A stretch of 64,000 nt of DNA from Convolutriloba macropyga (GCF_964194025.1 NC_134473.1:70866001-70930000); one strand, 5' to 3'; shown: positions 1,302 to 58,195, counted from the stretch's first letter. Program-made: numbers and translations. Notes: generated by a model from the letters alone, not told the origin.

Positions 1302-4300
1302 AAAATGCTTTTCTATCTGTTAGTGTTCATAGTAAAAGAGCGTATATTCAAAATTAAAAAAATAAAATCAGCTTTGACAACCTCACAAAAAATACACAAA
1401 AGAAACTTAAAACGCCAGACACACAACCTGTTGTTCTGTTCAACTTTTAAACTCATTATATTTCTAGAAGGTTTTGAGATCAGTTTTATTTTTTAATTTT
1501 CATGGGCTAAAATCAACTCTCCTAACTGAATATATCTTTGCAAGGTATTAAGTTTAAAAAAGTACTTTGGTGTGAGAAATTCTTCTCTTGAAAAATTATT
1601 AGAGTGACTATCATTTTTAATTTTTCAAAATTTGCTTGAACTGCAATATTAATTTACATAAAAATTATTTATTATAAAAATTACAAACATGTTTCTATAA
1701 TTGTTTTGTATATCGTCGTACAGAATTAATCTGGTACAGAAGTTATTCCTAACAAAAAAAATCAACAAAAAAATAATTTTTTGAAAATCACCAAAACTAA
1801 AACATTTCAAACATTTCTAAGTGAAATCTACCAAACGGGATTTCAAAAGCAAAGCATTCTCGCAAAAATGCGTTAGATGAGATCAACAACCTTACTACTA
1901 GTTCTTTGCTCGTGTGGTGAATTTTCGTTTAAACACTGAACTGTCAGCCCGTTTAGCATTTCAGCTATCAATACTGCATCACAATTTATTGCCGCTTTCT
2001 CTTTTCTTGTTGTTGATTATAAAAAGCGACAAGTTTGACAGCTCAGACAAGAATCGGAGCCAATAAGAAGCTTAGGTTGTTGGATTCGTACATTATAGCT
2101 TTGAATTTCCTGAGATGATTTACCAACTAAAAATTTGCTCGACAAAAAATAGATAAAAATTAGATAAAAACATTTGATTGGGAATCGAATTGCTAGGTCT
2201 AGAGTTGAACAAAAATATGAAATGATGCGTTTATGGGAAAAGCTGAACTAATCTAGTTTCTTAAAACTAAGTTTCAGAAAACAGTTTTTTAATAAGTTTT
2301 GAGTAAACTAAGCTGACAGAGTGCCACCAAAGAGCCACGATTGCTTTAGAGAAATTTCGTATAGTATCACTAAAACTTTTTCGCTGCTTTCTCATTAGGT
2401 TCTCAAAACTTCGCATCCTTTTCAGAAGATATTGGCATTATCAAATCTTTGGCTGAGATTACTATTGGCGTAAAAACGGTTAAATAGTGAAGAAATTTAT
2501 TGAAATACTTCGCTCTGTATTTAACGACGGATCCCAATTCGGACAATTTGTCAAGGGTTTTCGTTTGAGCCTTTTCAAGTTTGCTTAAAAATCCGACAAT
2601 GTTTATGTTACTTTGTAAACTCTTGTTTCCACTGGTTTAGTGTCGTTCAATGACATTCTACCGTGGCTCTTCGCTGGCACTCTGCAAGCAGCTTATTTTA
2701 TTCAACATTCGTACGAAAAAAAAACACACATTTTCTCCGATATACAGTTTTTACGGAATTGGATTACTTTATCTCTTCTCATAAACGCGTCTTTTGAATT
2801 TTTTTGTTCAACGCTAGACTCTTTAACCATCGGGAATAATCGACGTAAATTAGAAGAAAGTGCGTTTTCCTTTTTTCTAAAAGTTGTTTGTTTAAAAAAA
2901 AGATATTGTTCCACATTTGTATTCAATCAAAAAAAGGTACATCAGGACCATCACAGTCGTTCAATTGGATTCAATTTTAGGTACACAAATTCATTGAAAT
3001 GAATTCCACGTTAATAAACTTTTCACAAATTAAGTTTAAAAGAGTTAACATAGCTGGCAGATTGCCAGAAAATGCTTTTCTATCTGTTAGTGTTCATAGT
3101 AAAAGAGCGTATATTCAAAATTAAAAAAATAAAATCAGCTTTGACAACCTCACAAAAAATACACAAAAGAAACTTAAAACGCCAGACACACAACCTGTTG
3201 TTCTGTTCAACTTTTAAACTCATTATATTTCTAGAAGGTTTTGAGATCAGTTTTATTTTTTAAATTTCATGGGCTAAAATCAACTCTCCTAACTGAATAT
3301 ATCTTTGCAAGGTATTAAGTTTAAAAAAGTACTTTGGTGTGAGAAATTCTTCTCTTGAAAAATTATTAGAGTGACTATCATTTTTAATTTTTCAAAATTT
3401 GCTTGAACTGCAATATTAATTTACATAAAAATTATTTATAATAAAAATTACAAACATGTTTCTATAATTGTTTTGTATATCGTCGTACAGAATTAATCTG
3501 GTACAGAAGTTATTCCTAACAAAAAAAATCAACAAAAAAATAATTTTTTGAAAATCACCAAAACTAAAACATTTCAAACATTTCTAAGTGAAATCTACCA
3601 AACGGGATTTCAAAAGCAAAGCATTCTCGCAAAAATGCGTTAGATGAGATCAACAACCTTACTACTAGTTCTTTGCTCGTGTGGTGAATTTTCGTTTAAA
3701 CACTGAACTGTCAGCCCGTTTAGCGTTTCAGCTATCAATACTGCATCACAATTTATTGCCGCTTTCTCTTTTCTTGTTGTTGATTATAAAAAGCGACAAG
3801 TTTGACAGCTCAGACAAGAATCGGAGCCAATAAGAAGCTTAGGTTGTTGGATTCGTACATTATAGCTTTGAATTTCCTGAGATGATTTACCAACTAAAAA
3901 TTTGCTCGACAAAAAATAGATAAAAATTAGATAAAAACATTTGATTGGGAATCGAATTGCTAGGTCTAGAGTTGAACAAAAATATGAAATGATGCGTTTA
4001 TGGGAAAAGCTGAACTAATCTAGTTTCTTAAAACTAAGTTTCAGAAAACAGTTTTTTAATAAGTTTTGAGTAAACTAAGCTGACAGAGTGCCACCAAAGA
4101 GCCACGATTGCTTTACAGAAATTTCGTATAGTATCACTAAAACTTTTTCGCTGCTTTCTCATTAGGTTCTCAAAACTTCGCATCCTTTTCAGAAGATATT
4201 GGCATTATCAAATCTTTGGCTGAGATTACTATTGGCGTAAAAACGGTTAAATAGTGAAGAAATTTATTGAAATACTTCGCTCTGTATTTAACGACGGATC

Positions 4301-4840
4301 CCAATTCGGACAATTTGTCAAGGGTTTTCGTTTGAGCCTTTTCAAGTTTGCTTAAAAATCCGACAATGTTTATGTTACTTTGTAAACTCTTGTTTCCACT
4401 GGTTTAGTGTCGTTCAATGACATTCTACCGTGGCTCTTCGCTGGCACTCTGCAAGCAGCTTATTTTATTCAACATTCGTACGAAAAAAAAACACACATTT
4501 TCTCCGATATACAGTTTTTACGGAATTGGATTACTTTATCTCTTCTCATAAACGCGTCTTTTGAATTTTTTTGTTCAACGCTAGACTCTTTAACCATCGG
4601 GAATAATCGACGTAAATTAGAAGAAAGTGCGTTTTCCTTTTTTCTAAAAGTTGTTTGTTTAAAAAAAAGATATTGTTCCACATTTGTATTCAATCAAAAA
4701 AAGGTACATCAGGACCATCACAGTCGTTCAATTGGATTCAATTTTAGGTACACAAATTCATTGAAATGAATTCCACGTTAATAAACTTTTCACAAATTAA
4801 GTTTAAAAGAGTTAACATAGCTGGCAGATTGCCAGAAAAT
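1302..4840 (+). repeat. Tandem duplication, 2 x 1767 bp (1302-3068 / 3069-4840)
   Basis: Identical ORFs offset by 1767 (2640/4407, 2702/4469). AAAAT microhomology at the junction. At least 4 substitutions seen between the copies. Confidence 0.97.
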
Positions 4841-5873
4841 AGCCGCAATAGATTCGTAGATCGACAGTCTAAAAAAACAGTAAAAAAGACAGACCAAAAA
4901 AATTCGTCTTTTTATTGAAGACTGATCTGTTATATTTTGATTAAAAATCTGTATAAGTTATTTCTGCCTCTATTAGCTGATTTCAAATAACCTTCATTTA
5001 GAGTGACACACACCCATTTGACCTTATCTCTTTGAATTAAAGTAAATAAAAGTCAATTTCAAATTGAGGAAGTCATTTTTGAGAGTGAGGTAAGTCAAGT
5101 GTGACCAAAAAATTAATCATGCGCATGAACAAAACACTCGCTCCACTAAGAGCGAAAAAGGACGTCACACATGCAATTCAGTTGAAATTGCATGAACGAA
5201 TGAACAAAAAGTGGCTGTGACGTCATATGGTCGTAACAAAAATCATGACGACGAAATAAAAAAACATAGCAGGACAAGTCCTGACGTACAATTCAAAGAA
5301 TTTTCATTGACTAAACAGAAAAACTAGACCAGGAATGGACTGTGAGTGACTTGAGAAAACCATTTTGAAAAAATCAGATCAAAAAATAAGAAAAAAAAAA
5401 CAGAAAATCAATGTCAAAATGCCGCATGTGAACAAAAAAACCAATAGCGAGAAATGAAAATTCAATTCAAACAAAAAACTAGGCCTAGAATGAGCTGTGA
5501 ATGGATTGGGAAAACCATTTAGAAAAAAATCCGATCCAAAAAATCGAAAAAACAGTAAAAATCAGAGTGAAATTGCCGCATGTGAACAAAAAACCACTCC
5601 CGAGAAACCGAATTTTTGTTCAAACACTGTTTTCTCACTCTACTTTAAAATTAGAGCGATAAAAATTTACGCCGCAAAACCACTCGCTTTTTCGCTCTAT
5701 TTCCTGTTTCGGCGTGACCAAAATCACTACTCCAATTTGACTTCAAAAATCATGAAAATGTGTGAACAGATCTTAAAAAAAAGACAGCGCCCCAATACAA
5801 TTCAAATTATTTGAATTGTAAAAAACCAAGAGAAGGCCAATAATAGCCCCAGCTATCGCTGTGCGGCTATTAA
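4814..5873 (-). mobile_element. Non-autonomous Helentron-type (HINE-like) element, family B
   Basis: On the + strand: AACATAG, hairpin CTGGCA-gat-TGCCAG (4821-4835), subTIR AATAGCCGC (4838-4846) ... GCGGCTATT (5863-5871), with a partial IR AATAGCC just inside the right end. On the - strand this reads subTIR ... subTIR + 3' stem-loop + TT, the HINE layout. Confidence 0.75.
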
Positions 5874-6043
5874 TAAAGAGTTCAAAAGAAAAACGAAGTA
5901 ACAAAAGTTTTCCTCCATTTTTCCTTATATATATTTTAACCTTTCCTGGTTTTTCGATTTCCAATTTTCATATCAATTTTTGTCTTAGTTAAAGCAAATG
6001 CCTGCCCAGCTACACAACAAAAATTAAAAACACAACAACCCAA

Positions 6044-6572
6044 AATTATAGCAGGCACATTACCGGAAAACAGCCACTATTGTCGCGCTTGATGCACATT
6101 GGGATTAAAAATGAAAGTTGAAAATAAAGAGAAAAAAGTCTAGAGAATTATCTAAGTTTTCAAAGTGTTTTTATTTGATGGCAAATTCTGCATATTTGAT
6201 TAGCTTTGAAAATTACACTTAATTAAGCTTCTAAACAGAAATACATTAAGAATAATATAATATAATGCAAGGTAAATATCGCTTTAATGAATTTTGAAAA
6301 CCTACTTCACTATGACTTAATGAACGAGCTTTATATTTTTTAACCCTTTTCTTTTGATTTTGCTCTTTTGATTTTAACAGTATTCACCACATTGCGTAAT
6401 TTATTGCGCAAAAGAGTTTAAAATCCATTCAGTTGAAACTGTGAGTGAGGTAAGTCAGAGGACAAGCGTAGAAATTGTGACTTTTGTTAAAAAAACGTGC
6501 TCAAAAACTGAGCGAAATTTTAAAAAGGAGAGCGCCTAAAGATAGCCGTTGAGAAGCTGACGGCGGCTATTA
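6044..6572 (-). mobile_element. HINE-like family B copy (diverged); a further left-end copy follows at ~6680-7130
   Basis: ATAGCAGGCACATTACCGGAAAACAGCC left end, GGCGGCTATT right end, and the shared internal GAGTGAGGTAAGTCA motif. Confidence 0.6.
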
Positions 6573-7759
6573 TTAATAACCAAGGGAAGGCGATGGTGAG
6601 AAAATGAAAACATATTTTTTAACCTTCAATACAGGATCTTTTTATAAACGTTTATTTTTGATTTTTAAACAAAATTGCTACTTAGCCACTCATTACCGGA
6701 AAATAGCTGCCGTTGGCCTCCTTGACGCACATTGGGGCTGAAACAAAAAAAAGAAAAAGAAGAGCTGAAGAGTTATAAATTAACAGATGTCTTTCTAAGT
6801 GTCAAAAGTGTTCTAATTTGGTGTCCGATTTCAGGTAGGTTCTAAAATTAGCTTTAATGCAACTTCTTCACTAAGACCTATATTGTTTATGACTAACGAA
6901 CACTAGCAATGGTTGAAAAAAAAATTTGACTAATTAATGCATCATGACTTAATGACAAGTTTAATCGGTTTGTTCTGTTTCCTTTGATTTTGCTCTTTTG
7001 ATCTTGGCCGTCTTCCGTCTTCACAATATTTTGGAACTTATCGAGTCATTGGATTTTAACTCTTTTTAGTGGTAACAGTGAGTTAGTTTAGTCAGACAGT
7101 AGGTCATGAAAGTCATGACTTATGTAAATCAGAAAAGTGGATCGAAAGAAAACAAGAAAAAAACATAGGTTGAAGACTCGAAGAGACCTCTCTGTCTATA
7201 AAACTGTTTTTCGATTAATTGATACAGACTAACGGACTAAATTGAATGAAAAGGTTTTAAAAATAAGTCAGAAAATAATATGAAAAAATTTTTTTAAAAA
7301 AGTAACTGTACTAGAAATTAGAAGAAAATCAATAACTCTATATATAATACGAGTCTACCCAAAAACAAATTTTTTTAAGCAGCCCTTGAATACATTATTA
7401 AGCCACGTCAGGGTCACATAATATTCTATTTTATGAAAAAAAGGAAAAATACGTCGGGAAATTGGCAAAATATATAGAAATTTATCTTTTTTGCGTCATT
7501 TTACTTCACAAAGCACAGTTTTATACCATAGAAATTGTAATTTTCTGATACCTACAAAATATTTTGCCAAAATGGTTTTTTTCAATACACAATGAATGCG
7601 ATAAAACACGAAATTTCAAAAGAAAGCTAAAATAACTTAAAAATTTGCATGATAGCAGAAAAACCTCTATAACAATATAAAACTAGGATTCTTAATTTAT
7701 TCTGAACACTAATTTGAACTAAAATAAAATTGTCATTACAGCCTTTTCTTTAATAACTT

Positions 7760-8275
7760 AACAATTGAAGTCGGGAAAATTGCTCTCAAACGACTGGCGA
7801 GCAGTTGGCTTTGTCAGTAGCTAGCCACTTTTTTGGTGAGGCTAGCCTTAGCCTAATTGAAGGGGCGTGATGTGGGCTTAGCGGCTGTAAGGGGGTTCTT
7901 TGGCCGCACGGGGCCCTTACAACCTGAGCAAGGTACAGCGGTGTGAATTAGAGGGGAGAGGGGGTTGAGTAAGTGAGGGGGCTAATCTGGAGGGGGTGTT
8001 ATATGGGGGAGGGGGTGTGGGGGCCAACCTATAGGAACCGCCATTTATACCACAAGTAGAGGTCTCCAAAACTTTTTCTGTGAATCGCATACCTAGAGAC
8101 TAGTGAGCTGAAGGGTTCTAAAAACAATTAATCTTCTCTGTACGCTACCTGTTTATCCTGTTTGTGAGGATGAAAAGTCAAATGGCTCAGACGAAAAATC
8201 GGTCACGCCAAAAATCGCATAAAAAGATAAACAGGACTAATTTAATTGCTACAAACTTCGTTTGAGAGAAATTAA
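7760..8275 (-). mobile_element. HINE-like family A copy
   Basis: AATTGCTCTCAAACGA ... AATTGCTACAAACTTCGTTTGAGAGAAATT with a G-rich centre; collinear with 48505-48932. Confidence 0.8.
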
Positions 8276-8495
8276 TATTGTATTAACCACTTTCCTCTAT
8301 TCATTAATATTGTATTAACCACTTTCCTCTATTCATTTTTTTCTGTTCCAGTTTCTTGAATAACTCTTCTTTTCCAACATGCGAAAAAATGTGTGTTTTG
8401 AAATAAAAAAAATAGGCTCTAGTGGCTAAAAATGTTTTTTCTCTTTTTTCGCTACGAAGCGTAAACAAAAAATAAAAGTTTGACTGAAGAAAGTT

Positions 8496-9921: not shown

Positions 9922-10331
9922 AGCTTTATTCAATTGGTATATGAAATTAGATTGTAAACGGCAGCTTCTCTATTAGACATAGATAATATTCATTGAAAGT
10001 TGTTTGGTAACCCAATTGTAATCTTATTTTTGCTTTCGATTTGAAGAAAACAATTCACAGTGTTTTGAAGTTATACTTTGGAAAGATAAGATCTCGTGAC
10101 GCGCATTTTGGTATGAAGAGGATAGAATGTTATTGAACTTGAAGGAGACAGACGGAACACTTCACTCTAATCAAAAGAGTCCAAAAGACTATGATTCAAC
10201 TTTAACGGAGGACACTGAACAAAAGAAAACTAGTGTTTACAAAGTAACATAAACCTGTCTAAAATGCGTTCCGTCCATAAAGACAGAACGAAGGAGGAAA
10301 ATATTTCTTTACTGCTTTTTCTTACGTCAAG

Positions 10332-10491
10332 AATAATCTCAACCGAAAATTTCAAAATTCAAACAATTTATGAAAAGGATGCAAAGTGCCCCCTGTACCA
10401 CGGGAACTCTGTGGGGCAATGTCACCATTTATTTTTCTTAGCAAAAACTGTTCCGTCACTAAAATTACCCGACTTTGATGGCTCATGGAAT
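10332..10491 (+). CDS. Putative exon of + strand gene A (unknown protein); 5' boundary uncertain
   Basis: Pyrimidine tract + CAAG acceptor; open frame IISTENFKIQ...DGSWN (ORF 10264-10512); phase-0 GTAAAT donor matches the next exon. Confidence 0.45.
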
Positions 10492-10639
10492 GTAAATATA
10501 TATCGTATCTAGGAATGTTACTCGCAAAAAGATACAATAACCCTAGCATTGAAAGATTAGCAGGCTGTAAACAAAAATGTATACAAAAATGGATCATATA
10601 CAGCTAAGCCAATCGTCTCGAATAACTCCTGCTTTGAAT

Positions 10640-11340
10640 TTGCAAAAACTTAATGAGAAAGCAGCAAAAAAGTGTTCGAGTGATACTATACTAAATGTCT
10701 GCAAACCAATCATGGCTCTTTGGCGACACTCTGCCAGCTTAGTTTGTTCATCATTTGCTCAAAAAATAAATTATTTTTTTTCTGAAATCTATTCTTTACG
10801 GAATTAGGTTAGTTCAACTCTTCCCATAAACGCATCTTTTGCAATATTTTTGCTCAACTGTAAACTCAAGCAATTGGATTCTTAGTCAATTGCTTCTAAC
10901 CATTTTTTGTCTATTTTCTATCAAAATTCTTTTAGTTGGCAGACAAATCATCTCAAAATCTCTATTGTAAGAAGCTAACAAACCAAATTTCTTACTGGCT
11001 GTGACTCCTGTATGATCTGTCGAACTTGCCCCTTTTTATAAGCAACAAGATGAAAAGAGAGAACGACAATAATTTGTGCTGCAGTATTGCTACTTGATAT
11101 GCTTAACAGACAATTTAGCGTTTAATTGAATTTCACCACAGGAGCAAAGAACTAGTAGTACAATTGGTCATCTCAGAACGATGCATTTATGCAGAGAATA
11201 TTCTGCTTCTTAGAACCAACCCAGTTTGTTAGATTGCATTTAGAAATTTTTTAGTTTTTAAGGTGATTTTTGTAAATTAATTTTCTTTTTGGTTGATTTT
11301 TTTTCGTTAGCAACAACTTATATACCAGCAGACTAATTGA
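10640..11340 (-). repeat. Diverged inverted copy of the repeat at ~1720-2350
   Basis: For example GGAGCAAAGAACTAGTAGTA (11141) is the reverse complement of TACTACTAGTTCTTTGCTC (1893); similarity continues across ~700 bp. Confidence 0.75.
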
Positions 11341-12568
11341 CAAAATACTTGATTTTTTGTATTTTCTGAAAAAAATGTTCAGAAAGTTTCACTCGGCTTT
11401 TGGGATTTGAGACTGTTATCTTAGTTAATATTTGACCTGGGATCTAAAAACTTTGTGTTGCGAGTTATGAGGTGTTGAATTTTGTATATGAAGAATTTTT
11501 AATAAAAATTATAGAAACATGGATGTAATTTTTCTCCTCACTTCCGTTGGAATTTATTTTTTTGTACAATCACAATGTTTATGTTAATCTGATATCGCCT
11601 AAACTCAAATAATCAACAATATCTTTGGAAAAAATGGAGTGTCAGAGTTATAAAAACAAAAAACAAAACCCTATAGCGGAAACAGTTAATGGACGCCATT
11701 TAACCCTGAACAACAGAAAACGATGAGACTTTTTGTCATAGACTGTAAACTACAAAGAAGGAAAAATGACATAAAATAAGCGTGACAGTCCAAAAGTATC
11801 AAATATGTTTCAAAACAGGTCCTGTAGGAAATGTAAAAACCAAACGCAATAATCTAATTTAAAAACGGAATCTCTATTTTGCGTTACCAGAACTCCAATG
11901 AGGCTTGGCATTAACAATTTTAAAAGACAACAGATAACAAATACGACAACAGATTGGGGCAAAGCTCAGAAAATCAACTACATTATTTGAAACCAAGTAG
12001 TGTTAAAATCGAAAAAAAATTGATATTAATTAAAATATGCATAAAATTCTAACAAATAAGAACAGAAATTTAAACATTAGTAGCATTTGATGAAAAATGT
12101 CATTGAATGGAGGAGTGAAATTGCCAAACGCCGAAGAAGTCTCTTTTAAAAATGCGACATTTTTTTTCGAATATCAATTCCGCATTACGCTTTTCAAGTA
12201 ATTTGAAAAACTTTCACGTCTCTGGTCTATTCATTTTTGGCCACCTTTATTACTCAAGTGGAATTAAAATTATTACCCAAAACTTGACTTCTCATTGACA
12301 AAAAAAGGAAAAAAGTAAAAGAAATGTTTGACAAGACCTTAAGATCATAGATGCAAGACACGGGAACTGACTCGAAGCTGATAACCACTTAAGCCAAACA
12401 CACCAGAAAACAATCTACACCTCTTGATTGATTACATTTTTGATTTTGAAGCAAACGGAGAAAAATTATCATGAAAAATATAGTTCTGATAACAAATACT
12501 GGTAAAATATCTTAAAAATTTCCATTCGAATTGCAATTCGGAAAAAAACTGTTGGCAAGAAAAGTTGA

Positions 12569-13110
12569 AACATACCCGGCAGATTGCCGGAAAATAGCCG
12601 CCGTTGATTCCAATAAGCATGATTGGGATTGAAATAACGGAAGATATTGAAAAAAAAAAGATTTTTGTACAAAAACATTTTTTTAAGTCCGATTTATTTT
12701 GATGGCATTTCGTAGTTGAACATACTTCTGTTTCTTAGAGAGAGGCTACAGGGGCTACTATCAATACCAATAAGCATTAGAGATGGTAACTAAGACTTAT
12801 AGGAACGACGTTCAAATAGCGGGCATCTAAAATTGGGCTTTATGGGTTTATCCCGTTTCTACTTCTGACTTCAATTTTTTATACTGACTCTGTTCATTTT
12901 AAATTGCTTTGCTGAGCAACTGATGTTCAAAATCACTTTTAGCAGAATGAGAGAAGAGAGAAACTAGCCTAGAGAAGTCAAAAAGATTTCACGCAAAATG
13001 TTGAAAAGGCGGCAAAATGAGGTAAAGCGAAACATTTTTTTATTCGACGAAGTAAAAAAAAAAATAGGAGCGCTATAATAGCCGGCTGAGAAGATGAGGG
13101 CGGCTATTAA
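12569..13110 (-). mobile_element. HINE-like family B copy with well-preserved ends
   Basis: Hairpin CCGGCA-gat-TGCCGG (12576-12590); AATAGCCGCC (12593-12602) / GGCGGCTATT (13099-13108). Its interior matches 55990-56470. Confidence 0.8.
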
Positions 13111-13963: not shown

Positions 13964-14084
13964 AACATACACCAACTAATTTTGGACGAATTGGTATCGA
14001 ACGACTCGCGATCCAGAAGGGCGCATAGACAACATAATATTTTGATGAAGCAAAATTTTCAGACTAGGGAGGTGCTGGATCTTC
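13964..14084 (+). CDS. Exon of gene A (NIHQLILDELVSNDSRSRRAHRQHNILMKQNFQTREVLDL)
   Basis: (CT)n tract + CAG acceptor; 121 nt open, phase 0 to phase 1; GTGAAT donor; phases fit both neighbouring exons. Confidence 0.65.
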
Positions 14085-14100
14085 GTGAATGCGCGGATAT

Positions 14101-14330
14101 AACCGACTAACGTCGAACGAAATGCTCACAAACGACTGGCGAACGTTTAATTTTTGTAAGTAGCTAGCTACGGCTTTAGGGAGGTCAACTTTATCTTAAG
14201 TGAAGGGTCGTAGGGTGAGCGCAGTTGGAGGGGTCAAGTGGGGTGTACGTAGGGGAGCAGTTTTCTCTATAAAAGTCACTCTAAATAATCTCGTCTTTTG
14301 CTCGGCAAAATGACGTAAACACTTTTTTAT
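14101..14330 (-). mobile_element. HINE-like family A, hairpin-end fragment
   Basis: AACCGACTAACGTCGAACGAAATGCTCACAAACGACTGGCG...; starts 16 bp after a splice donor. Confidence 0.65.
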
Positions 14331-14757
14331 CGTTCGCGGTATTTGGCTTCCTCAAAAACACTTCCTTTATAAAAAGAAGTCACTGATTGACAAAAATGCA
14401 TACCCTTACTCCTCGTCGAGTTGTGAAAAGACAATGCACTAATGCAATCTGATTTTTGAATGGTAAGGAAGGAAAGCGCTAAAATATTAGCCATTAAGAT
14501 GCTGATGGCGGTTATTAAAAAGAAGTAACAGGCGCTGAACAATTACGATAATTTTTACAGAGCTATAATTGCAGAAAATAAATTCAGGAAAGTGGTCACA
14601 ATTAACGGAGAAAAGAAGTCACCACATAGCTCAAATCAGCAAAACCATTAAATCCAAATTTGTGTTTAATAACATTATTAGATGTAGCATTTGCTGAGGC
14701 ATCAGCCTGCGTGCTATACAATTTTCAATGGGGAAATATTTACTTTTCACACCAGGT

Positions 14758-16634: not shown

Positions 16635-16644
16635 CTCCTCCTAT
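16635..16644 (-). promoter_or_regulatory. Polypurine tract (ATAGGAGGAG) abutting the 3' LTR
   Basis: + strand CTCCTCCTAT lies immediately inside the LTR end. Confidence 0.85.
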
Positions 16645-16648
16645 CATG

Positions 16649-23662: not shown

Positions 23663-23673
23663 AAATTGAATAT

Positions 23674-41876: not shown

Positions 41877-41975
41877 CTATAAACATAAACAATCACTACA
41901 AAAACAAGCAAACACTACACACGGTAAAAAATCAGAAAAGGAAATTCAATCTGAAAAAATCTCAGGACAAAATGT

Positions 41976-44832: not shown

Positions 44833-44850
44833 CTGCATTCAAATTAAAAT

Positions 44851-47280
44851 AACATAGCCGGCAAATAGCCGGAATAGCTGCGAAAGAATAGACTTGCGTG
44901 CCGTATAATAGAGATTGAAACGGATACAGTTATAGGCTGAAAAAGCTATCGAAGCAGCTAAAAATATATTCAGCGATAAATTAATCAAACTTGTTAAAAT
45001 TCCCTCCGCAGAAGCCTTTCTATTAGTGACCTTAAATACATATGTGAGTTCCTTTTGCCTTAAACAATTTCAAATTAAAATTAAGTCTAAAAATGTAAAA
45101 GCCATTTTATTGAGTGAGGTAACTAACGAATGATCAAAATCTAGTCATACAATTGAACTAAACGTTTTTGCTAGAGTGAATGAGAAATGACGTCACGCGC
45201 GCAATTGCCGTTAGAGAGAGGAAGAAGTAAATCAGAAAATTTGACCTTTTCAGCTCTGCGGTGTAATCAACTTCAAAACAAAAACAGAGCGTCCAATGAC
45301 AATGCAAAAGCATAGCAGTACAAATTCTGAAATAAAATCCAAAGAAGTGGAAGAAAAATTATAATTACTCTACCTGACAGCAGATCTATTGTGATCCAAA
45401 AAGATAGACAATCTCAAAAGTTGAGAAACTAAAATAACCAAACAAACTAAACAAAGAACAATCATAGCTAAAATTCATGAAGCTCTCACCCCATAGGCAA
45501 AATTTGATCCATCTGAATATACCCGTTAACCCATGCACAAGCCTTGAAAACTGTTTATTGGCCAATAAAAATTTTAAAAAACCGAGAAAATACTTTTAAA
45601 AAATAGAAAGTTGCAAAACTTAAATAAAGTTTTTTATTTTTGCATTATGTTACATATTAGAATGTTCCAAGCCACTTTCTTGTCTCTAAAATCTGTCTTC
45701 TAACCCATCTGTCTGATCTAAAATTTTTATTGGCCAGTACAGATCAATAAATTTCAAAAAATTTGAAAGTAATTGCCAATCGTATTAAAATTTTTCTAAA
45801 ATTGGTGATATTAAAATCTTCAATCACATTTTATTATCAAGCCATAAAAACTTTCTTTGGCTTAGAGATCGATAAAATAGGAAAAAGGCAATAATTTTCA
45901 GAAAATTTGACAAAAAATTATCAAACTTTCTAAAAAAAATTGCTAAATATCGCGTTATTAAATTGTTGAAAACAATTCCACTGCAACCACATACAATAAT
46001 ATAAAATTGCAATACCTTATTATCAGACGGTAGAGGAGGTTATCTGACCACTGAGGTTGGAAAAACACAGGAAATGACAAAAAACATTAAGGAAATTTTT
46101 ATAAAGAAAATTGAACATTTTATTTAAAAAAATTGCTGAAATTCGTGAAATTGAGATGTCTAAAACCGTTTCTTTATCAAGAGAAATTGTTTAGAAACCT
46201 ATTATCAAACCCTAGAGGAGCTTCATTGGACCCGGAGGCTAGAAAATGTCAAAAAATTATAAACATTTAAAAATTTTTTAAAAATTAGTTACATTTCTCG
46301 TGTTTACGTGTGCAGTACCCAAAAAATATAGCTCATAAAATGATCAAAAAGTATTTATATCATGCAAATGACCTGTATCAAATTTGACAACTGTCAGTTC
46401 AAGACCAATTAAAAAAATAGAAAAATGACATAAAGTTAAAAATTGCACGGTTTTAGGCTCCAAATTCTTAAAAATGACGTTTAACCTTGAGTTAAGGCCT
46501 CCCAGTAGCTTCACCACTCTAATCTCATGGAGGGACACTAAACACCGCTAAGGGCCTCTAATGAAACTTGATGCCCTCTGAGTTTTACCTCTTCATCCCG
46601 TTTTGAAAGCTCAATTTCGTGAAATGAAAAAATAATGTATGAAAACATCTTACAAAAAAAGACAGACCACAAATACAATCCATTTCTTGGATTTCAAAAA
46701 AAAGAAAAGCGCCAATACAATCCTTAAATCGCTATTAAAACTTGAATGACTGCTGAAACCACATTCGGGCCCCTAATGGAACTTAGTGACCACTGGGCTT
46801 TACCTGTTTATCCCGTTTTGAAAGAAAACCTTAAAAAAAGACAGAGCCCCAATATAATCCAAATCTTGGATTGTTAAAACATAACAGGAGACGTCCTGAA
46901 TTACAATCCAGAAAATAAAAATTGAATGGCGTCATAATTATTCTTTATAGATTATCATCAAACAATGACAGTCAACAAAATTCTTGACCTTTATTGAGCA
47001 AAAATTAACCAAATCTAAAAAAAAACAACTACCAAAGTATTTTTTCCAGGTCTTAGTGCTATAGAAAAAATTGAAAACAACAACACATTATAGATAGTAA
47101 TTAAATAGTAATTAATAACATTTCTAATTTGACTCCTCACTGATTTGAAAGAGCCGAACAAAGTGTGAACAGATCTCAAAAAAAGACAGCGCACCAATAC
47201 AATTCAAATGCTTTGGACTGTAAAAAACAACAAAAATTGCAATATAATTCGTATCAGCTTACAGTTTTGCAGCTATTGTA
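44851..47280 (-). mobile_element. Long degenerate family B unit with internal ~180-bp satellite copies
   Basis: Left end AACATAGCCGGCAAATAGCCGGAATAGCTGC; satellite at 45780-46340; the right module at 47160-47280 matches 5760-5873. Could be several adjacent pieces. Confidence 0.45.
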
Positions 47281-48504
47281 AACAACTACCGACGGTCGAA
47301 TTGCTCTCATACTCATTGCGGGAGGTTGGCTTGTGTTTTTTGTAAAAAGGTGACAAAAGTGGGAGGGGCAGAACCGTATATAAATTTAATTGTTGAATTG
47401 TTAATCCTTTTGAGGTATAGGAAAAATTTTAAAAAATTTTCAAGCGTTATTCATCGCAACTTAGCAGAAACGTACGCTCAGAGCTTAGTAAAGCTCTAAT
47501 AGAGCAGCTCAGAGACTTAATCTCCCCAGGTTTTGCAGGATTATCCCGTTTGTTAAGACAAAAAGTCAAATCAAATTGCTAAAGCGAACGAAAGAATGTT
47601 GTGGCAGAAAAGTGAAAATTCTAAAGTGAAGTAATGTATGAAAAAGTCACATGCGTTTACAATAATTGGTTCAATCTTGTTTTTGTTTCAAAACTACCAG
47701 TCTTTGCCCTATTTGGTAATAGACCTAACTGCCAAGAATGATAGGTTCGGGGTCTCTTTCCCATTGTAGGGTTTGGGGGACTCAATGTAGCCCCCACCCA
47801 CCTAACCTTAATTTATCATTAACGGGGGCTACAAGATGATATAATGGGAAAGACAGGCAACACCTTCGAATTACCGTGAGGATCTTTGTTCTTTATTAGA
47901 CTACGATTACATTATGCATTTTAATAGACACGCCCCTGGAATGAATGGTGTCCGCCAGAACAATCCCAAATATCAATGTTCAAAGCCAAATGTCGTGTGG
48001 ATGGAGCGTATGACATTGTCTATCTATCCACTGCCTCGAATATTCAAAATTGCCAACTCGATAGTGTTGATTATTTTGATTCAAAACTTTCGACTGTTAG
48101 CGTACAACATAATTCATAGTGTCGCAGTGCAGCTCCTGTCTTTACCGACTAAAATAGCGCTCTAAGGATTACATCGCAACTTTAGATTACCCTTGACAAA
48201 AGATTTGTCCTTTCCCCATTTTAAAAAATTATGATTCATAATGTATTCCCCTGTCACCTGTTATCCATAATTACATCATAAATAAAAAGAAGTTATAACG
48301 ATAACATTTCTTTTGATACCGTTTGTCAAATGTTATTGTCAGTGAACTTTGAGAAAAGCAAATTAATAATTTTTACAATTTTTTAACAAGAACTCAGTGA
48401 ATTCAAACTTGTTTAATAAAACTCGAACTTAGAAGATTTAAGACCATCACTAGGATGTTAACACCACTTATCAAGATTCAACTCTAATATACAAAACTAA
48501 ACAT

Positions 48505-48932
48505 AACCGACTAACGTCGGGCGAATTGCTCTCAAACGACCGGCGAGCGGTTGGCTTGGTCAGTAGCTAGCCACGGGGGGGGGGGGGGGTGCACTAGGGG
48601 CAGCACTGGGTGGGGGGGGGCAAAAGCGCGGTGGGGGGGGGGGTGGAGCCAATAGTGGGGGTGGGGGGTCAACAAAGGGGGGGGTGTCAACCTCTAAGAA
48701 CCGCCCCTCACACCATAAGTATAAGTATAAGTCTCCAAGACAGTTTGAGCTGAAACAGACCTGAAAGGCTCTAAGAGCACATAATGCCCGCTGGGCGCTA
48801 CCTGTTTATCCCGTTTTTGAGGACGAAAAGTCAAAAGCGTCAGACGAAAAATTGGTCAAGCGAAAAATCGCATCAAAAAAAAGACCGACAGGACTAATAT
48901 AATTGCTACAAACTTCGTTTGAGAGCAATTAA
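48505..48932 (-). mobile_element. Best-preserved HINE-like family A copy (428 bp)
   Basis: Hairpin CCGAC-taac-GTCGG; perfect 16-bp subTIR AATTGCTCTCAAACGA / TCGTTTGAGAGCAATT; partial IR AATTGCT; poly-G centre; AA (TT on the element strand) at both ends; no TSD. Confidence 0.88.
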
Positions 48933-49240
48933 AAATTTATGACGTTAGGACTGCCCAAAAAGAACATCAGACCTAGTAACAAAGACTAAGCAGATGAATA
49001 TGCAAATAACGGGAATTTGAAAATGATCTTCTTTGCTGAGAGTTCTTGTTTCTATTTCTGATCCCATGTTTTGATATTGACTTGGTTCAAAATAGATTGT
49101 TTTACTAATCAACAGCTGTATGAACTCACTGTGAGCGAAATGAGCGAAGAAACAAACTAACCACGAGATGTCAGATATTTGACGCAAGCTATCAACAAAA
49201 GGGAGAAATTTGGGTAAAACGAAACGAAACAAAGAAACAA

Positions 49241-50250
49241 AACCGACCAACATTGGACGAATTAATCTCAAAAGGAAGCCGAGTGGCTAACTTCGTTAGA
49301 GCTAGCCATGGTTTAGTGAGGCTAGCTTTAGCTTAAATGAAGGAGCGTAAGGTGAGAGTAATAGATGATTACATCACTCAGCTGAAGTGCGGCATCAACA
49401 AAAGAGTTAAGGAAGAGAGCGAGAGAGATAGTGAGAGAGAGAGAGAGAGATCTAGGAATATTTTGAATGATGAGTTTAGACTCTGCCACTTCTATTTTTC
49501 TAGCTTGGTTAGTAGTTAAATCATTAGAAAGAAAACTGAAAGTGCAAAATTCAAAAGAAAAGTTTCCACATTTCGCAGTGAAAAAATGTTCAAAACCACT
49601 TTTTGTCTCTAGAGTTGTTCTCCCATGTAACCCATCTGCAAGACTTAAAAAGTTTCGTTGGCCAGTAATGATTGTTAAACTCAGAAAAGAACAAAAGTAT
49701 TCAAAAATTTTGAAAACAATTGGAATTTTTAACACAATCTTGCTGAAATTTGTGATATTAATATTTTCAGAACCATTTCATTTTCTCAAGAGACAATCCA
49801 GTTTCCCTATTGCAAGCCTTAATCAAATTTACTGGCTCATAAAGATCCATAAACTTGGAACCTTACCAAAACATATAGCTCATAAAATGGTCATCGAATG
49901 TACTTATTTCTTTCAAAAGACCTTTATCAACTTTAACGAGCCTCAATTATAGACTGGTTCAACAAAGATTTCAACAAAAAAATTGAAACATTTTGGGCTC
50001 AAAAACTCCTAATAATGACCTTTCAACTATAAACTACGGCCAGCTCGGTAGATTCATAACACTGAGCACTTGAAAGACTACTAAACGCGGCAAATGAATC
50101 TTATTGCCGTCTGGGCGCTGCCTGTTTATCCCGTTTTCAAGGGCGAAAAGTCAAATGGGTCAGACAAAAAATCGGTCAAGCGAAAAATCCCATAAAGAAA
50201 GACCATCAAAATTGATATAATTGCTACAAGCTTCGTTAGAGAGCAATTAA
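49241..50250 (-). mobile_element. Composite family A unit (left end + extension + right end)
   Basis: Degenerate left end at 49241-49360; middle homologous to 42440-42930; right end GCTACAAGCTTCGTTAGAGAGCAATT. Confidence 0.6.
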
Positions 50251-50983
50251 ACAGGCTATTCTTCTAAAAAATTTAGATGAAAAAAGGTCAAGATTTTTAC
50301 TGAGATGTCATTCGAATTTTGTGTCAAAAATTATATAAAACGTCTGCTAGATGTTGAAAAAGCTAAAACCGTATTGACTCAATTCTAGAAAACTGATTTG
50401 AACTGAAAACGATTATAAAATGATGTTTCTGGCGCTATTTAAAAATTCTTTAAATATTTTAACTTCACTATTTTGACCGAAAATCAACAGTGCAAGTTTT
50501 GGTTGTCTGAAATTAATTATCATGTTTTCTGATCCCATGTTTGCAATCTAGCCGACATTTTTATTCTAATTGGTTTGAAGAAATTTCATTATTTGATTAA
50601 TGATCATTATCTTTGGCTTGCTGTATGATGGCATTCTAATACACCTCTCCGTTGCCACGCCCCTTAATGGTGGAGGGCGTTCAACCACGGATACACTTTT
50701 CTTACGACAATTGAATATATAACATTGTATAATTGAAATTGCTGTACAACTCACAAAATACGTTATAAGAATTGCAAAAAAAAACAATAAATTATTTCAG
50801 GAGGTCAATAGAAAAAAATAACTTAATTATGTATTTTTACATCGAGACAAAACCAATGTACCTCTGGGAGATAACTATTAGGCCACGAAAGCCTGTTTTC
50901 AAGTGCCTCAAGCAGAAGAGAAATAACTGTGCTACTTGTTGACAAGAACAACAGGAAAATTACCGCTGTCAATAAAAGAAAGA

Positions 50984-54800: not shown

Positions 54801-55695
54801 ACTGCAGCGAAGCATTGCCAGTTCTCTAGGAGTTTTTTATACTAGTGTTTTCAGTACTCGCACATTGATGAAACACATTCAGAAGCAAGAAATAAAACTT
54901 TCTATTTTAAAATGTTAAAAGGAGAAAGAAATTATTGCGAAAAACAATTCAGAACAAAAAATTGAGTAATCTACCCCCTTAAACAGCATCGGTGAATGGC
55001 ATACTTAGAGAGAGGTAAGGCTTCGAGAGATTCTAAGGCCCTTGTATGTCTCAATTTTGAGGATGAAAAGTCAATTTTGAGGTAAAAAACGATCAGAATA
55101 AAAGTTGCCGTTAAGAAAAATTGCAGCAAATTACGGCAGGACAAAAACAATTGCTGCAATCCTTATTTAAGAAAATGTGTTTCCTTTCCAAACTTTTCGA
55201 TTATTATTAGGCTTTGAGATTCACGAAATCTAATTGCTAACAGAAACTTAGCAGCAACTAATAGTGGAACAGCACCGTTGACGGATGCTGAAATGTTGAC
55301 CATTTGTTTTTCATACCTATAAAGCAACAATTTTCACTGGTGTAGTACAAATCTTGCAAAAACTGGAATTGGTCACAGTAAGTAACTTTCTAATCCGTCT
55401 AAAACTTGCTTAAAGCAGATCCTCACTTTCATTTATACCAACCCACAGACAAAAAACATTCTCGCCTTTTATTTCTTTGTATTTATTTTCCCTATTGGCA
55501 ATGTGAATTTCATTTTTTCTCGTGTCTTCAGTGAGCACCCCAACCTCTTCTCTCTGGCTCCTTTTCGTTTTGATTTTCAACCCCAACACTTTCTGCGTCC
55601 TTTCTTTGCTTGCCTTTGTTTTAAAACCCACTCCGTACGTAAGCTATATAAGATCAATTCACCCCCTCCCCCCGAAAAAAATTTGAAATGCTCAC

Positions 55696-55907
55696 AGGAT
55701 GGAAATGAGATAATAGCCAGAATCCACTTTGACATGAACAGGAGGAATATCTCGCACGTGTTCAGTCTGTTGCCCTTGAGGAGTGCCACATAGAACACCA
55801 CCCTTTGGAATACCCCCAGTGCCAGAAACACCAGGTAGCAGATTGCAGCGAATGATGCCATCAGAGAGTAGCAAGCTGAATAATAAACGCCATCATTAAA
55901 ACTACGT
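55696..55907 (-). CDS. Gene B exon, TM3-TM4-like (...ACYSLMASFAAICYLVFLALGVFQRVVFY...KWILAIISFPS); divergent rhodopsin-like GPCR candidate
   Basis: ORF 55577-55924; GTGAGC donor in phase 1 fits exon 44832. Cys...QRV in place of DRY; TM4 Trp...Pro. The acceptor is at either 55908 or 55876. Confidence 0.75.
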
Positions 55908-55989
55908 CTGCAAGCATTTTGCATTTTCCATACTTAAAAAAGCCATCGTTGGGCTAAAATACAAAATGCTTAACGCTTAAATCAATTCA

Positions 55990-56976
55990 TAACATGCCGG
56001 AAAATAGGAAAGATTGTTTCCCAAGACCCTGATTGGGATTGAAATAATAAAATTGATATATTTACAAAGAAAATAATTTTGAAGTGCTGTCTATTTTGAT
56101 TGGGCTTCGTAGTTAGGCACACTCCTGTTGCTAATTAAGTACACGGTGATTACTAGCATTAGCGAAAAACATAAGACCTGGTAACTAAGACAGCTAATAC
56201 TAATTAGAAAAAATTCTAGTAAAAGTATTTCTAAAACTGGTCTTTATGGGTTTATCCCGTTTCTAATTGTGATTTCGTTTTTCCCCATGGACTCTCTACA
56301 TTTTAATTTGTTTCGCTGGGCAACTGCTGCTTATAAATATTTTGGGCAGAATGAGCGAAAAATTAAACAGATAGAACAGAAAAACCTAAAGTGAAAAAAT
56401 TTTGGGAAATACGCTAAAATTTGATAAAAAGTAAAAGAGTTTTAATTGACTAAATAAAATAAACATCGACGGAACCTTGCCAAAAAATAACCTTCAATAC
56501 CTTCAACACGCCGGGCAAATTGCTCTCAAATCACTATGGTTTGAGTAGCATTGTGGCGTGCATAAGGGGGTGGGGGATCGAGGTAGTGGTCTCGGCGAAG
56601 GGGGCCAACCGTAGAGATATAATGAAGCCGGCGGGACTGTAAATCGCCAGGTGGTTGCGGGTGGACAGGTGGTGTGATTTGGAGGGTTATGGGGTGGGTG
56701 ACTGACTGACTGAAGCTGAAGGGGTGTTGTGTCAAGCTCTTAAGATTAGAAACCATCATTCACTCCATGAATTTATGTCGCATCAGCAGTTTAGGCGAAT
56801 CAAATACTTAGAAACTAGCAAGGCGTAGGTCTGTAAAAGAACTTATTACCCTGCGGGCATTACCTATTTAACTCGTTATTCAGGAGTCAGAAAGGTCAAA
56901 ACTTGTCAAGCGAAAAATTGCATTAAAAAGACCACATGACTATTATATTTGCTACGAAATTCATTTAAGAGATATT
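55990..56976 (-). mobile_element. Degenerate family B copy (55990-56470) followed by a family A copy (56505-56976)
   Basis: Interior matches 12600-13000; then CGGGCAAATTGCTCTCAAA ... TTGCTACGAAATTCATTTAAGAGATATT. Confidence 0.6.
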
Positions 56977-57103
56977 CGAAGGAACTTAAATATCCGCAAA
57001 TCAGCTGACGATCATTCAAAACGGGGTACAATTACTTTTAATTACCAAAAACTTTAAAGCCGTAATAATCGTATTAGTCGTACAAAAACACATTGAGTAC
57101 AAA

Positions 57104-57570
57104 AACATAGCTGACAAACTGCCAGAAAACAGCCGCAGTATCTGTGCAGATCTGCAGTCTAAAAACAGAGTAAAAGCATAAAAGAAACAGACCAAAAATA
57201 ACCTTTTTTAAATTTCTAGCTGAAACATTAGATTTTGACTAAGAATATGCATAACTTAATGATGTTTATACCAGCTGCTCTCGAATAACCTTCATTTAGT
57301 GTGACACACTCTCTTGACCTTATCTATTCGAATTAAAATAACGAAAAGTCAGTTTCAATGTGAGGACGTCATTTTTGAGAGGAAGTAAGTCAGGTGTGGT
57401 CAAAAAGTTAACGATAGTGAACAAAAAACTCGCTCCACTAAGAGTGAAAAGTGACGTCACACTCGCATTGCAGTTGAAGTTGCATCAATGAATGAACAAA
57501 AAGCAAATAAGTTCGTAACCAAAATCTTGACGACGAAATGAAAAAACAGCCATCGCCTTGTGGCTATTAA
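57104..57570 (-). mobile_element. HINE-like family B copy (shorter relative of 4814-5873)
   Basis: AACATAGCTGACAAACTGCCAGAAAACAGCCGC ... GTGGCTATTAA; interior collinear with 4850-5270. Confidence 0.75.
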
Positions 57571-57652
57571 ATACATACAAAAAACAAACTTCAAATTGCA
57601 AGTGTGCCGTTAAATCGCCCACTCAAAATTATGCAAACCTTGCAAAGCTCAC

Positions 57653-57721
57653 AAATTGAATCCATTTTTCAAAAAATTAGACAGATCTCTACGAAATTGA
57701 AACAAATTGCATGAATTGAAA
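57653..57721 (-). CDS. Tentative gene B exon (FNSCNLFQFRRDLSNFLKNGFN)
   Basis: TTTTAG acceptor, GTGAGC donor, phase 2 to phase 2. Confidence 0.35.
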
Positions 57722-57824
57722 CTAAAATGTAATCCATTGCTAACAAAATTGCCTAAAATCAGTATGTTTTTTTCATTTCCCGAAAAATTTATGATAAAAA
57801 CATTGAGACAACAATTGTTAAAAC

Positions 57825-58195
57825 CTAACGCACTAGCGACGGGCGAATAGCTCTCGAAAAACTGGCTAGCATTTACCTTCATCAGAAGTTGGATATTGTT
57901 TAGGGGGGCTTACTTGAGGGGCCCGGAGTGAGCACAGCAGGGGGAGTGCACCGGGGGTGAAGTGTCCGGGAGCGCTAAATGAGGGGGGTCAAACACTAAG
58001 CACCGCCCTTTGCACCATGGATTTATGTCTCCAAAACAGTTTCGGTGAATAGCGTATACTTCGAGTCTGGTAACCCCAACGGATCTAAGATAACTTAATG
58101 TTCTCCGAGAGTTACCTATTTATCCCATTTTTACGACTTAAAGTCAAAAGGACAAGAAAAAAAACAAGCGAAAAATTGCATAGAAGACCACGTGA
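57825..58195 (-). mobile_element. Family A copy, right end truncated
   Basis: GACGGGCGAATAGCTCTCGAAAA...; G-rich centre; TTTATCCC core. Confidence 0.65.

What the first reader, a model, noticed from the sequence alone, without database searches (positions are those of the whole stretch)
3046..58195. More than 20 Helentron-type elements of two families all point the same way, across two oppositely transcribed genes
Seen: every recognisable family A copy or fragment (7760, 14101, 23674, 24664, 25943, 40152, 41976, 47287, 48505, 49241, 50100, 54975, 56505, 57825) and family B copy or fragment (4814, 6044, 6680, 12569, 14487, 23007, 40818, 44851, 55990, 57104) lies in the same orientation (hairpin end to the left on the + strand). 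I found no reversed copy. They lie in introns of both the + strand gene and the - strand gene, so host transcription or selection against sense insertions does not explain it. Other repeats here occur in both orientations (1720-2350 vs 10640-11340). Known: Helentrons use an HUH/Rep nuclease, and bacterial HUH transposons (IS200/IS605) insert with replication-fork strand bias. Inference: eukaryotic rolling-circle elements here may be coupled to fork direction or to local head-to-tail re-insertion, so their orientation could map replication domains.
Basis: partly seen in the sequence, partly recalled or inferred. Interest (0 to 1): 0.85.

Follow-up and report, generated by a model that had tools for sequence, protein, structure and literature searches.

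The report
Same-direction rolling-circle transposon relics
About 25 short non-coding rolling-circle transposons (Helentron-type "HINEs") spread over 53 kb of this acoel-like animal genome almost all point the same way, and other loci of the genome show the same pattern, but the data fit gene direction and the elements' habit of landing inside each other better than replication-fork direction.

Summary
Profile searches on both strands give 39 distinct significant hits for families A, B and B2, all in one orientation and none reversed. A family-free scan for the 3' end motif gives 10 against 1.

There are two exceptions. Older pieces carrying a B-type hairpin end lie reversed at 10256-11328 and at 2657-2819 (duplicated at 4424-4586).

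The elements are true non-autonomous Helentrons (HINEs). A filled and an empty site show insertion after a T-run with no target duplication. They have subterminal inverted repeats and a 3' stem-loop.

The copies are independent insertions, not a segmental duplication. Four other loci of the same genome also carry these families, and each is uniform.

RNA contigs define the + strand gene at 27.1-38.1 kb, and it holds no A, B or D copy. Where host gene strand is known, all copies lie in sense. This holds for the twitchin-like gene and for two histidine-phosphatase genes, and more weakly for a − strand ATG exon at 16 kb here.

Copies insert strand-specifically at T-runs, often just behind the 5' hairpin cap of a resident element. 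Orientation is therefore inherited within nests.

Replication-fork coupling is untested and not needed.

First readers of this scan noted the same pattern in several other windows of this genome.

The parts
4812..5871 (-). Family B HINE acting as host. It has a palindromic 5' cap at 5842-5871 and a 3' hairpin at 4814-4835. Family D guest (5263-5820) is nested in the T-run about 50 nt behind the cap.
6046..6801 (-). Two B/B2-type 3' end fragments (6046-6199 and 6687-6801).
   Evidence: (E 4e-4 to 2e-6)
7755..8283 (-). Full-length family A HINE, solitary.
12566..13108 (-). Full-length family B2 HINE. It is 96.7% identical to the polymorphic insert L003:13277-13812.
13970..14520 (-). Two A 3' end fragments (13970-14012 and 14089-14224) and a B-type 5' cap (about 14487-14516).
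23003..23660 (-). B-type pieces: 3' hairpin at 23007-23028, body at 23455-23611, 5' cap at 23629-23660. Family A's 3' end abuts this cap 11 nt away.
23672..24184 (-). Full-length family A HINE.
24650..26316 (-). Composite family A element with 176-bp tandem repeats (25160-25942) and a G-rich microsatellite.
38791..39215 (-). Family B HINE, solitary, 0.7 kb downstream of the 3' end of the + gene.
40138..40852 (-). A fragments (40138-40550) and a D-in-B cap junction (40753-40852) of the same design as 5776-5871.
41962..43936 (-). Composite family A element with tandem repeats, colinear with 24650-25942.
44849..45206 (-). Family B HINE.
45746..47587 (-). Tandem-repeat remnants, A right-end fragments, a D 3' hairpin (46878-46898) and a degraded A copy (47278-47587).
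48490..50257 (-). Full-length A (48490-48943), the 5' half of a B2 (48960-49225) and a composite A (49234-50257).
54976..58199 (-). A fragment (54976-55172), B2-like copy (55986-56363), A (56508-56977), full-length B (57102-57575) and A (57819-58199).
10256..11328 (+). Exception. This is a reversed copy (74% identity) of the composite repeat 1731-2545 / 3498-4312, and it carries a B-type hairpin and subTIR end.
2657..2819 (+). Exception. This is a reversed B-type end piece, repeated at 4424-4586 by the 1767-bp tandem duplication.
27095..38090 (+). RNA-verified + strand host gene with no A, B or D copy. The first exon ends at 27392 (ATG at 27259). The other exons are 34849-35294, 36535-37158 (to within 2 nt) and 37529-38090 (stop codon at 37870). 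Its introns are GT-AG, GC-AG and GT-AG.
35706..35960 (.). Very high-copy 255-bp element E in intron 2 of the + gene. Its polarity is ambiguous. Its orientation relative to A/B is the same here and in L003.
15955..16068 (-). Putative first coding exon of a - strand gene: ATG at 16068, acidic peptide, GTAAGA donor at about 15955. This is inferred from sequence only.
16228..22064 (-). Young Copia LTR retrotransposon with identical 407-bp LTRs. It interrupts the domain and was used as a handle to fetch other loci.

Best explanation
The repeats are non-autonomous Helentrons (HINEs) of at least four families: A, B, B2 and D. They inserted independently. Two effects acting together give the near-uniform orientation.

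(1) Strand-specific integration (shown). Integration happens just 3' of a T-run on the strand that becomes the element's own strand. The favoured T-runs lie inside resident HINEs, directly behind the palindromic 5' cap or at element ends. A guest therefore takes the orientation of its host. The element strand also carries 4 to 12 times more long T-runs than its complement, so HINE-rich DNA keeps recruiting copies in the same direction.

(2) A link to host transcription (observed association, cause inferred). The orientation of founder copies follows the host gene, because copies are found only in sense orientation. Either antisense copies are removed by selection, or the displaced sense strand is the single-stranded target. 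The non-element strand carries donor-like GTAAGT/GTGAGT motifs and more poly(A) hexamers, which fits selection.

On this reading the canonical minus-strand copies at 4.8-14.2 kb lie in a - strand gene. Those at 23-26 kb and 38.8-58.2 kb lie in - strand transcribed or HINE-derived DNA. The + strand gene between them stays free of them.
For: HINE identity:
- Filled site L003:13277-13812 against empty site L002 about 13684 (GAGTTATTTTT^ATTAATG) shows no target duplication.
- The insert has a 5' AATAGCCGCC paired with GGCGGCTATT, then a CCGGCA-ATC-TGCCGG hairpin and a GTATGTTT tail.
- Family A has a 16-17 nt subTIR, a CCGAC-GTTA-GTCGG hairpin, a microsatellite and 176-bp repeats.

Independence:
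- The A right-end tree is star-like and window copies are not monophyletic.
- Window B2 is 96.7% identical to a copy on another contig but 67% to its window neighbour.

Generality:
- Loci from other contigs of the same assembly are each uniform: L003 all minus, L004 all plus, L006 seven minus, L007 five plus.
- The cross-locus BLAST sign matrix is almost pure, for example 0+/44-, 0+/35-, 0+/18- and 10+/0-.

Nesting and T-run targeting:
- D sits in the T-run behind B's 5' cap.
- All 12 readable 5' junctions follow a T-run.
- T-runs of at least 5, 6 and 7 bases on the element strand against the other strand number 189:45, 87:14 and 36:3.
- In five loci the non-repeat DNA also has more T-runs on the element strand.

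Gene link:
- HINEs lie in three separate introns of the - strand twitchin-like gene in L004, all in sense.
- They lie in at least four introns of two + strand histidine-phosphatase genes in L003, all in sense.
- The RNA-verified + gene in the window has none.
- Donor-like motifs number 11 against 1, and poly(A) hexamers 36 against 18, on the non-element strand.
Against: - Only two loci have a firmly known gene strand. The third, the - strand ATG exon at 16 kb, is inferred from sequence alone. Sense in all of them has a chance probability of 0.125-0.25 if orientation is set per domain.
- I found no evidence of a - strand gene in 38-58 kb or 22-27 kb. Pfam scans of 30 ORFs gave nothing.
- If transcription alone set orientation, the + gene should carry sense copies, and it carries none.
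- Element E in the + gene keeps the same orientation relative to A/B as in L003, although the gene relation differs. This is one bit in favour of a determinant above gene level.
- T-run asymmetry outside HINE DNA is only 1.2-3.2 fold. That is too weak to give 100% uniformity among solitary copies.
Confidence: 0.5

Rival explanations
1. Replication-fork coupling. The HUH Rep integrates the transferred strand into single-stranded DNA of one fork template, as IS200/IS605 elements do. Orientation would then record the usual fork direction and mark replication domains of 50 kb or more.
For: - Uniform orientation extends over at least 53 kb here and over every 15-20 kb locus sampled.
- It crosses a young Copia element, a putative divergent-promoter interval (16-27 kb) and the far side of a + strand gene.
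- Uniformity across separate introns cannot come from nesting alone.
- Element E keeps its relative orientation in two loci whose host genes relate differently.
- The absence of copies from the + gene fits 'all insertions in this domain are minus, and antisense ones are purged from genes'.
Against: - There are no replication data, and no skew inversion is visible in repeat-masked DNA.
- All copies in genes of known strand are in sense. A fork model predicts this only if forks and transcription are co-directional.
- Two reversed copies exist.
- Nesting and T-run asymmetry already explain much of the clustering.
Confidence: 0.2
2. Nesting and T-run targeting alone. A few founders with random orientation seeded each block. 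Everything else follows from same-strand insertion into HINE-derived DNA, and agreement between blocks and with gene strand is chance.
For: - Nest structure and T-run junctions are seen directly.
- T-run asymmetry inside HINE DNA is 4-12 fold.
- The window may hold only three or four truly separate blocks, for which agreement has P of 0.125-0.25.
- An earlier follow-up in this genome found guests always just inside the host's 5' end (s1-240938).
Against: - HINEs in separate introns, divided by conserved exons, agree in L004 and L003. That is 7-9 founders, all alike and all in sense.
- About six solitary copies in non-repeat DNA of the window also agree.
Confidence: 0.2
3. One ancient segmental or tandem amplification copied a few elements together with their orientation.
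For: - Colinear composites occur at 24.65-25.94 kb, 41.96-43.94 kb and 49.2-50.3 kb.
- A 1767-bp tandem duplication lies at 1302-4840.
- The D-in-B junction recurs at 5.8 and 40.8 kb.
Against: - Similarity stops at element ends.
- Window copies are 65-91% alike, yet some are 96-97% identical to copies on other contigs.
- The tree is not clustered by locus.
Confidence: 0.03

Closest known systems
HINE / DINE-1 non-autonomous Helentrons (Thomas et al. 2014, PMC4067079)
   Same: - Subterminal inverted repeats of 10-17 nt.
- A short stem-loop right after the 3' subTIR.
- T strings at both boundaries and insertion at T-T without target duplication.
- A central microsatellite and tandem repeats.
   Different: That paper reports no orientation rule. 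Here the copies are almost all one way over tens of kb, and they strongly prefer the T-run behind another element's 5' cap.
Cg_HINE elements of the Pacific oyster (PMC7492417)
   Same: They are non-autonomous Helentrons carrying satellite-like tandem repeats, dispersed through gene-rich DNA.
   Different: The oyster elements are reported to be integrated in both orientations. Here one orientation rules each locus.
Telomere-capping Helitrons of Paramecium (PMC13085455)
   Same: They show an absolute orientation bias, which the authors explain by insertion into one specific strand of an asymmetric target. That is the same logic as strand-specific T-run or cap targeting.
   Different: Their target is telomeric repeats at chromosome ends and the elements are autonomous. 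Here the target is T-runs inside other HINEs and in introns, at internal loci.
IS200/IS605 (IS608) bacterial HUH transposons
   Same: They use an HUH nuclease, single-stranded DNA intermediates and a strand-specific target next to a short motif. Their orientation is biased with respect to the replication fork. This comes from my own knowledge of the family and was not checked in a paper here.
   Different: They are bacterial, have no helicase fusion, and fork direction is known for their hosts. No replication information exists for this genome.

Membership tests
Helentron-type non-autonomous element (HINE) | Insertion at a T-T or T-run site without target-site duplication | tested here: met
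   The empty site L002 about 13684 and the filled site L003:13277-13812 differ by exactly the element. The flank TTATTTTT^ATTAA is not duplicated.
Helentron-type non-autonomous element (HINE) | Subterminal inverted repeats of about 11-15 nt | tested here: met
   Family A has AATTGCTCTCAAACGA / TCGTTTGAGAGCAATT, seen as the only minus-strand nhmmer hits. B2 has AATAGCCGCC / GGCGGCTATT.
Helentron-type non-autonomous element (HINE) | [quoted passage not shown] | tested here: met
   The hairpins are A CCGAC-GTTA-GTCGG, B CTGGCA-ATC-TGCCAG, B2 CCGGCA-ATC-TGCCGG and D CAGGA-CTTG-TCCTG (5-bp stem, 4-nt loop). Each is followed by a YTATGTTT tail.
Helentron-type non-autonomous element (HINE) | Central microsatellite and/or tandem repeats | tested here: met
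   There is a G-rich microsatellite and 165-176-bp repeats at 25160-25942 and 43015-43936.
Helentron-type non-autonomous element (HINE) | An autonomous partner with Rep-helicase(-endonuclease) sharing the termini | not tested
   There is no such ORF in the window or in the fetched loci. A first-reader note mentions RepHel proteins elsewhere in this genome (s1-263058), unchecked.
Replication-fork-oriented HUH transposition (IS200/IS605-like behaviour) | Orientation correlates with fork direction and flips at origins and termini | not testable with these tools
   There are no origin or fork-direction data. The repeat-masked skew profile is uninformative.
Transcription-linked (sense-only) intronic transposon | Copies in genes of known strand are in sense orientation | tested here: met
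   This holds for the L004 twitchin-like gene (-) and for two L003 histidine-phosphatase genes (+). All 7-9 intronic copies are in sense. That is only two independent loci.
Transcription-linked (sense-only) intronic transposon | Orientation flips between adjacent genes on opposite strands | tested here: inconclusive
   The only RNA-verified + gene inside the minus-oriented domain carries no A, B or D copy in either direction. The polarity of element E is ambiguous.

The most novel reading that the evidence does not exclude
Integration of Helentron-type elements in this animal is physically coupled to a chromosomal polarity. The coupling would be either to the single-stranded template of a replication fork or to the displaced sense strand of a transcription bubble or R-loop. 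HINE orientation would then be a fossil record of fork or transcription direction over domains of 50 kb or more.
Probability: 0.25. Interest if true: 0.85.

Novelty: new variant of a known kind. Interest (0 to 1): 0.55.

Why it matters
How eukaryotic rolling-circle transposons choose and enter their targets is poorly known. A genome where dozens of independent HINE insertions per 50 kb share one orientation, in every locus sampled, shows that integration or survival is strongly strand-specific.

It also offers a natural data set for separating three causes that are usually confounded. These are target-sequence asymmetry with nesting, transcription, and replication.

The pattern has a practical use as well. 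HINE orientation may predict the strand of poorly annotated genes in this genome. And HINE nests explain much of the intron expansion: the twitchin-like gene spans 22 kb here against 10 kb in a related species.

Tried and rejected
- **Pfam scans.** I scanned 30 window ORFs to find host exons. Only the Copia polyprotein hit.
- **Codon-usage scoring.** Scoring trained on 2146 codons recovered the + gene exons but gave only one - strand candidate, at 15848-16114.
- **AT/GC skew.** Skew of repeat-masked DNA gave no usable polarity signal, in the window or in L004.
- **Walking along the 120-kb ENA contig.** One guessed ORF was not on record, and the steps needed were too many for the look-up cap.
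- **More loci with known gene strand.** The homologues of the twitchin exon that I fetched came from other assemblies, probably other species, and carried no A or B copies. They added no test.
- **Paralogue difference.** The L002 / L003 difference at L002 11036-11343 is an internal deletion, not an insertion event.
- **Literature.** Searches for orientation rules of Helentrons, DINE-1 or acoel Helitrons found only the Paramecium case.
- **Rejected explanations.** Chance, segmental duplication and assembly artefact. On the last, a second assembly matches 24 kb of the window at 99.996%.
Full report
**Setting.** The window has 35% G+C and no gaps. An earlier follow-up note calls the organism acoel-like. 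A second public assembly, ENA ERZ25071359, contig of 120 kb, matches window 6649-30520 at 99.996%. The arrangement is therefore not an assembly accident.

**The observation.**
- Self-BLAST gives 214 direct and 63 inverted HSPs.
- The inverted ones are (AT)n tracts, three palindromes, one TIR pair and the repeat 1731-2545 against 10256-11328.
- All family A pieces fall into one component whose members match only in direct orientation.
- Profiles built from the A left end, A right end, B and B2 were searched with nhmmer --max on both strands. They give 39 distinct hits at E<1e-3, all on the + strand.
- The minus hits are the 16-17 nt subterminal inverted repeat and one weak hit at 10750-10690.
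- A scan that ignores families, looking for a perfect hairpin followed by a TATGTT-like tail, gives 0 against 7. A relaxed version gives 1 against 10, with 1.5 expected per strand.
- Two exceptions exist. A reversed piece also lies at 2657-2819, copied to 4424-4586 by a tandem duplication.

**What the elements are.**
- Two paralogous loci, L002 and L003, are 93-97% identical and differ by one B2 element.
- The empty site reads GAGTTATTTTT^ATTAATG. The filled site has 536 bp there, with no target duplication.
- The insert starts with AATAGCCGCC. It ends with GGCGGCTATT, then the hairpin CCGGCA-ATC-TGCCGG, then GTATGTTT.
- Family A has the same plan, with a 16-17 nt subTIR, the hairpin CCGAC-GTTA-GTCGG, a G-rich microsatellite and 165-176-bp tandem repeats.
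- This is the design described for HINE/DINE-1 non-autonomous Helentrons (PMC4067079).

**Independent insertions.**
- Similarity stops at element ends.
- A maximum-likelihood tree of 17 A right ends is star-like. Window copies do not form a clade, and two of them group with copies from another contig.
- Window B2 12568-13116 is 96.7% identical to L003:13265-13811 but 67% to window 55995-56359.
- Only the composites 24.65-25.94 kb and 41.96-43.94 kb pair up.
- Segmental duplication is therefore rejected as the main cause.

**The pattern is general.**
- Members of the window's Copia family (165 cluster members) and one element-derived ORF served as handles.
- With them I fetched eight further loci of 12-24 kb from other contigs of the same assembly.
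- Five of them (four independent, L002/L003 being paralogues) carry A or B copies, and each is uniform: L002/L003 all minus, L004 all plus, L006 seven minus, L007 five plus.
- The sign of every cross-locus BLAST match outside Copia is almost pure per pair of loci: 0+/44-, 0+/35-, 0+/18-, 10+/0- and 0+/8-. This includes a further family, D.
- First readers of this scan noted the same thing in several other windows of this genome. Those are leads, not evidence.

**Genes.**
- Contigs of two RNA runs laid on 34600-40599 show a spliced + strand transcript. Its exons are 34849-35294, 36535-37158 (to within 2 nt) and 37529-38090.
- The loose 5' end of that transcript maps to 27363-27392.
- The introns are GT-AG, GC-AG and GT-AG. 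The ATG is at 27259 and the stop codon at 37870.
- No A, B or D copy lies between 26316 and 38791.
- A plausible - strand first coding exon lies at 16068-15955, with an ATG, an acidic peptide and a GTAAGA donor. If real, the copies at 4.8-14.2 kb are in sense within that gene.
- In L004 a twitchin/titin-like gene lies on the minus strand. Its exons are confirmed by Pfam and by an ortholog from a related species. Its HINEs, in three separate introns, are all in sense.
- In L003 two tandem histidine-phosphatase genes lie on the plus strand. HINEs in at least four of their introns are all in sense.
- Exons separate these copies, so nesting alone cannot explain their agreement.

**How copies land.**
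- All twelve 5' junctions that can be read follow a T-run on the element strand.
- In the window, family B (4812-5871) hosts a family D guest (5263-5820). The guest sits exactly in the T-run about 50 nt behind B's palindromic 5' cap.
- The same junction recurs at 40.8 kb and in L003 and L006.
- Family A abuts a B cap at 23660.
- This agrees with an earlier follow-up on nests in this genome.
- Inside HINE DNA, T-runs of at least 5, 6 and 7 bases are 189:45, 87:14 and 36:3 in favour of the element strand.
- In five loci the non-repeat DNA leans the same way by 1.2-3.2 fold.
- Strand-specific T-run targeting therefore makes orientation heritable and self-reinforcing.
- The non-element strand carries GTAAGT/GTGAGT 11 times against 1, and poly(A) hexamers 36 times against 18. 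Antisense copies in introns would plausibly be harmful. This last step is inference.

**Weighing the explanations.**
- Nesting is shown, but it cannot account for agreement across introns or among about six solitary copies.
- A determinant at gene or domain level is needed.
- Sense orientation in both firm loci, plus one weak one, and the empty + gene favour a link to transcription. The number of independent loci is small, with a chance probability of 0.125-0.25.
- Against a pure transcription model, the + gene has no sense copies. I also found no gene in 22-27 kb or 38-58 kb.
- Element E (35706-35960, depth about 4000 times baseline) keeps the same orientation relative to A/B in the window and in L003, although the host-gene relation differs. 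That is one bit only, and its polarity is ambiguous.
- Replication coupling remains possible and untested.

**Known and new.**
- The element type is known.
- Oyster HINEs are reported in both orientations.
- The only comparable absolute bias I found in the literature is that of Paramecium telomeric Helitrons, explained by a strand-specific target.
- A near-absolute orientation rule for HINEs across whole loci, at internal chromosomal sites of an animal, did not turn up in my searches.
- I class it as a new variant of a known kind.

Noticed in passing
window 1302-4840: There is a 1767-bp tandem duplication at 99.8% identity. Each unit ends in the 22-26 nt 3' hairpin piece of family B (3047-3068 and 4814-4835). 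The duplication junction therefore lies at a HINE 3' end, which could reflect rolling-circle read-through or slippage.
   Followed up: partly
window 35706-35960: Element E is 255 bp long, and its depth in DNA runs is about 4000 times the local baseline. It has sharp boundaries, repeated GCCAGAAGT motifs, an internal inverted repeat and a terminal hairpin (GTGACT..AGTCAC). It may be another HINE-like or MITE family.
   Followed up: partly
window 27095-38090: This spliced + strand gene encodes a low-complexity, probably disordered protein with no Pfam match. Its second intron is GC-AG and its first intron is 7.4 kb long.
   Followed up: partly
window 27503-27658 and 27768-27831: Two near-perfect palindromes (156 nt at 91% and 64 nt at 97%) lie just inside intron 1 of the + gene, 110-440 nt after the first exon.
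   Followed up: no
window 16228-22064: This is a Copia element with identical 407-bp LTRs and an intact 1290-aa polyprotein. Its 90% cluster has 165 members on different contigs, so the family is recently active.
   Followed up: partly
window 14760-15712: A 61-71 nt inverted-repeat pair lies 813 nt apart, directly downstream of the putative - strand first exon. It is probably a TIR transposon.
   Followed up: no
L003:15200-20393 and L007:1-2900: There are ORFs with Pox_A32 packaging ATPase and double-jelly-roll capsid domains. These point to Polinton/Maverick-like or virophage-like insertions in the host genome.
   Followed up: no
L004 against L010: The orthologous part of the twitchin/titin-like gene spans 22.4 kb in this genome but 10 kb in a related species' assembly. 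The extra DNA is Copia and HINE insertions in introns.
   Followed up: partly
window 51140-54450 and about 55400-55900: There are degraded non-LTR retrotransposon remnants (RT and endonuclease motifs) on the minus strand inside the HINE-rich block.
   Followed up: no
window 58972-59778: There is a 402-bp tandem duplication at 99.75% identity inside the LTR element at 58572-64000.
   Followed up: no
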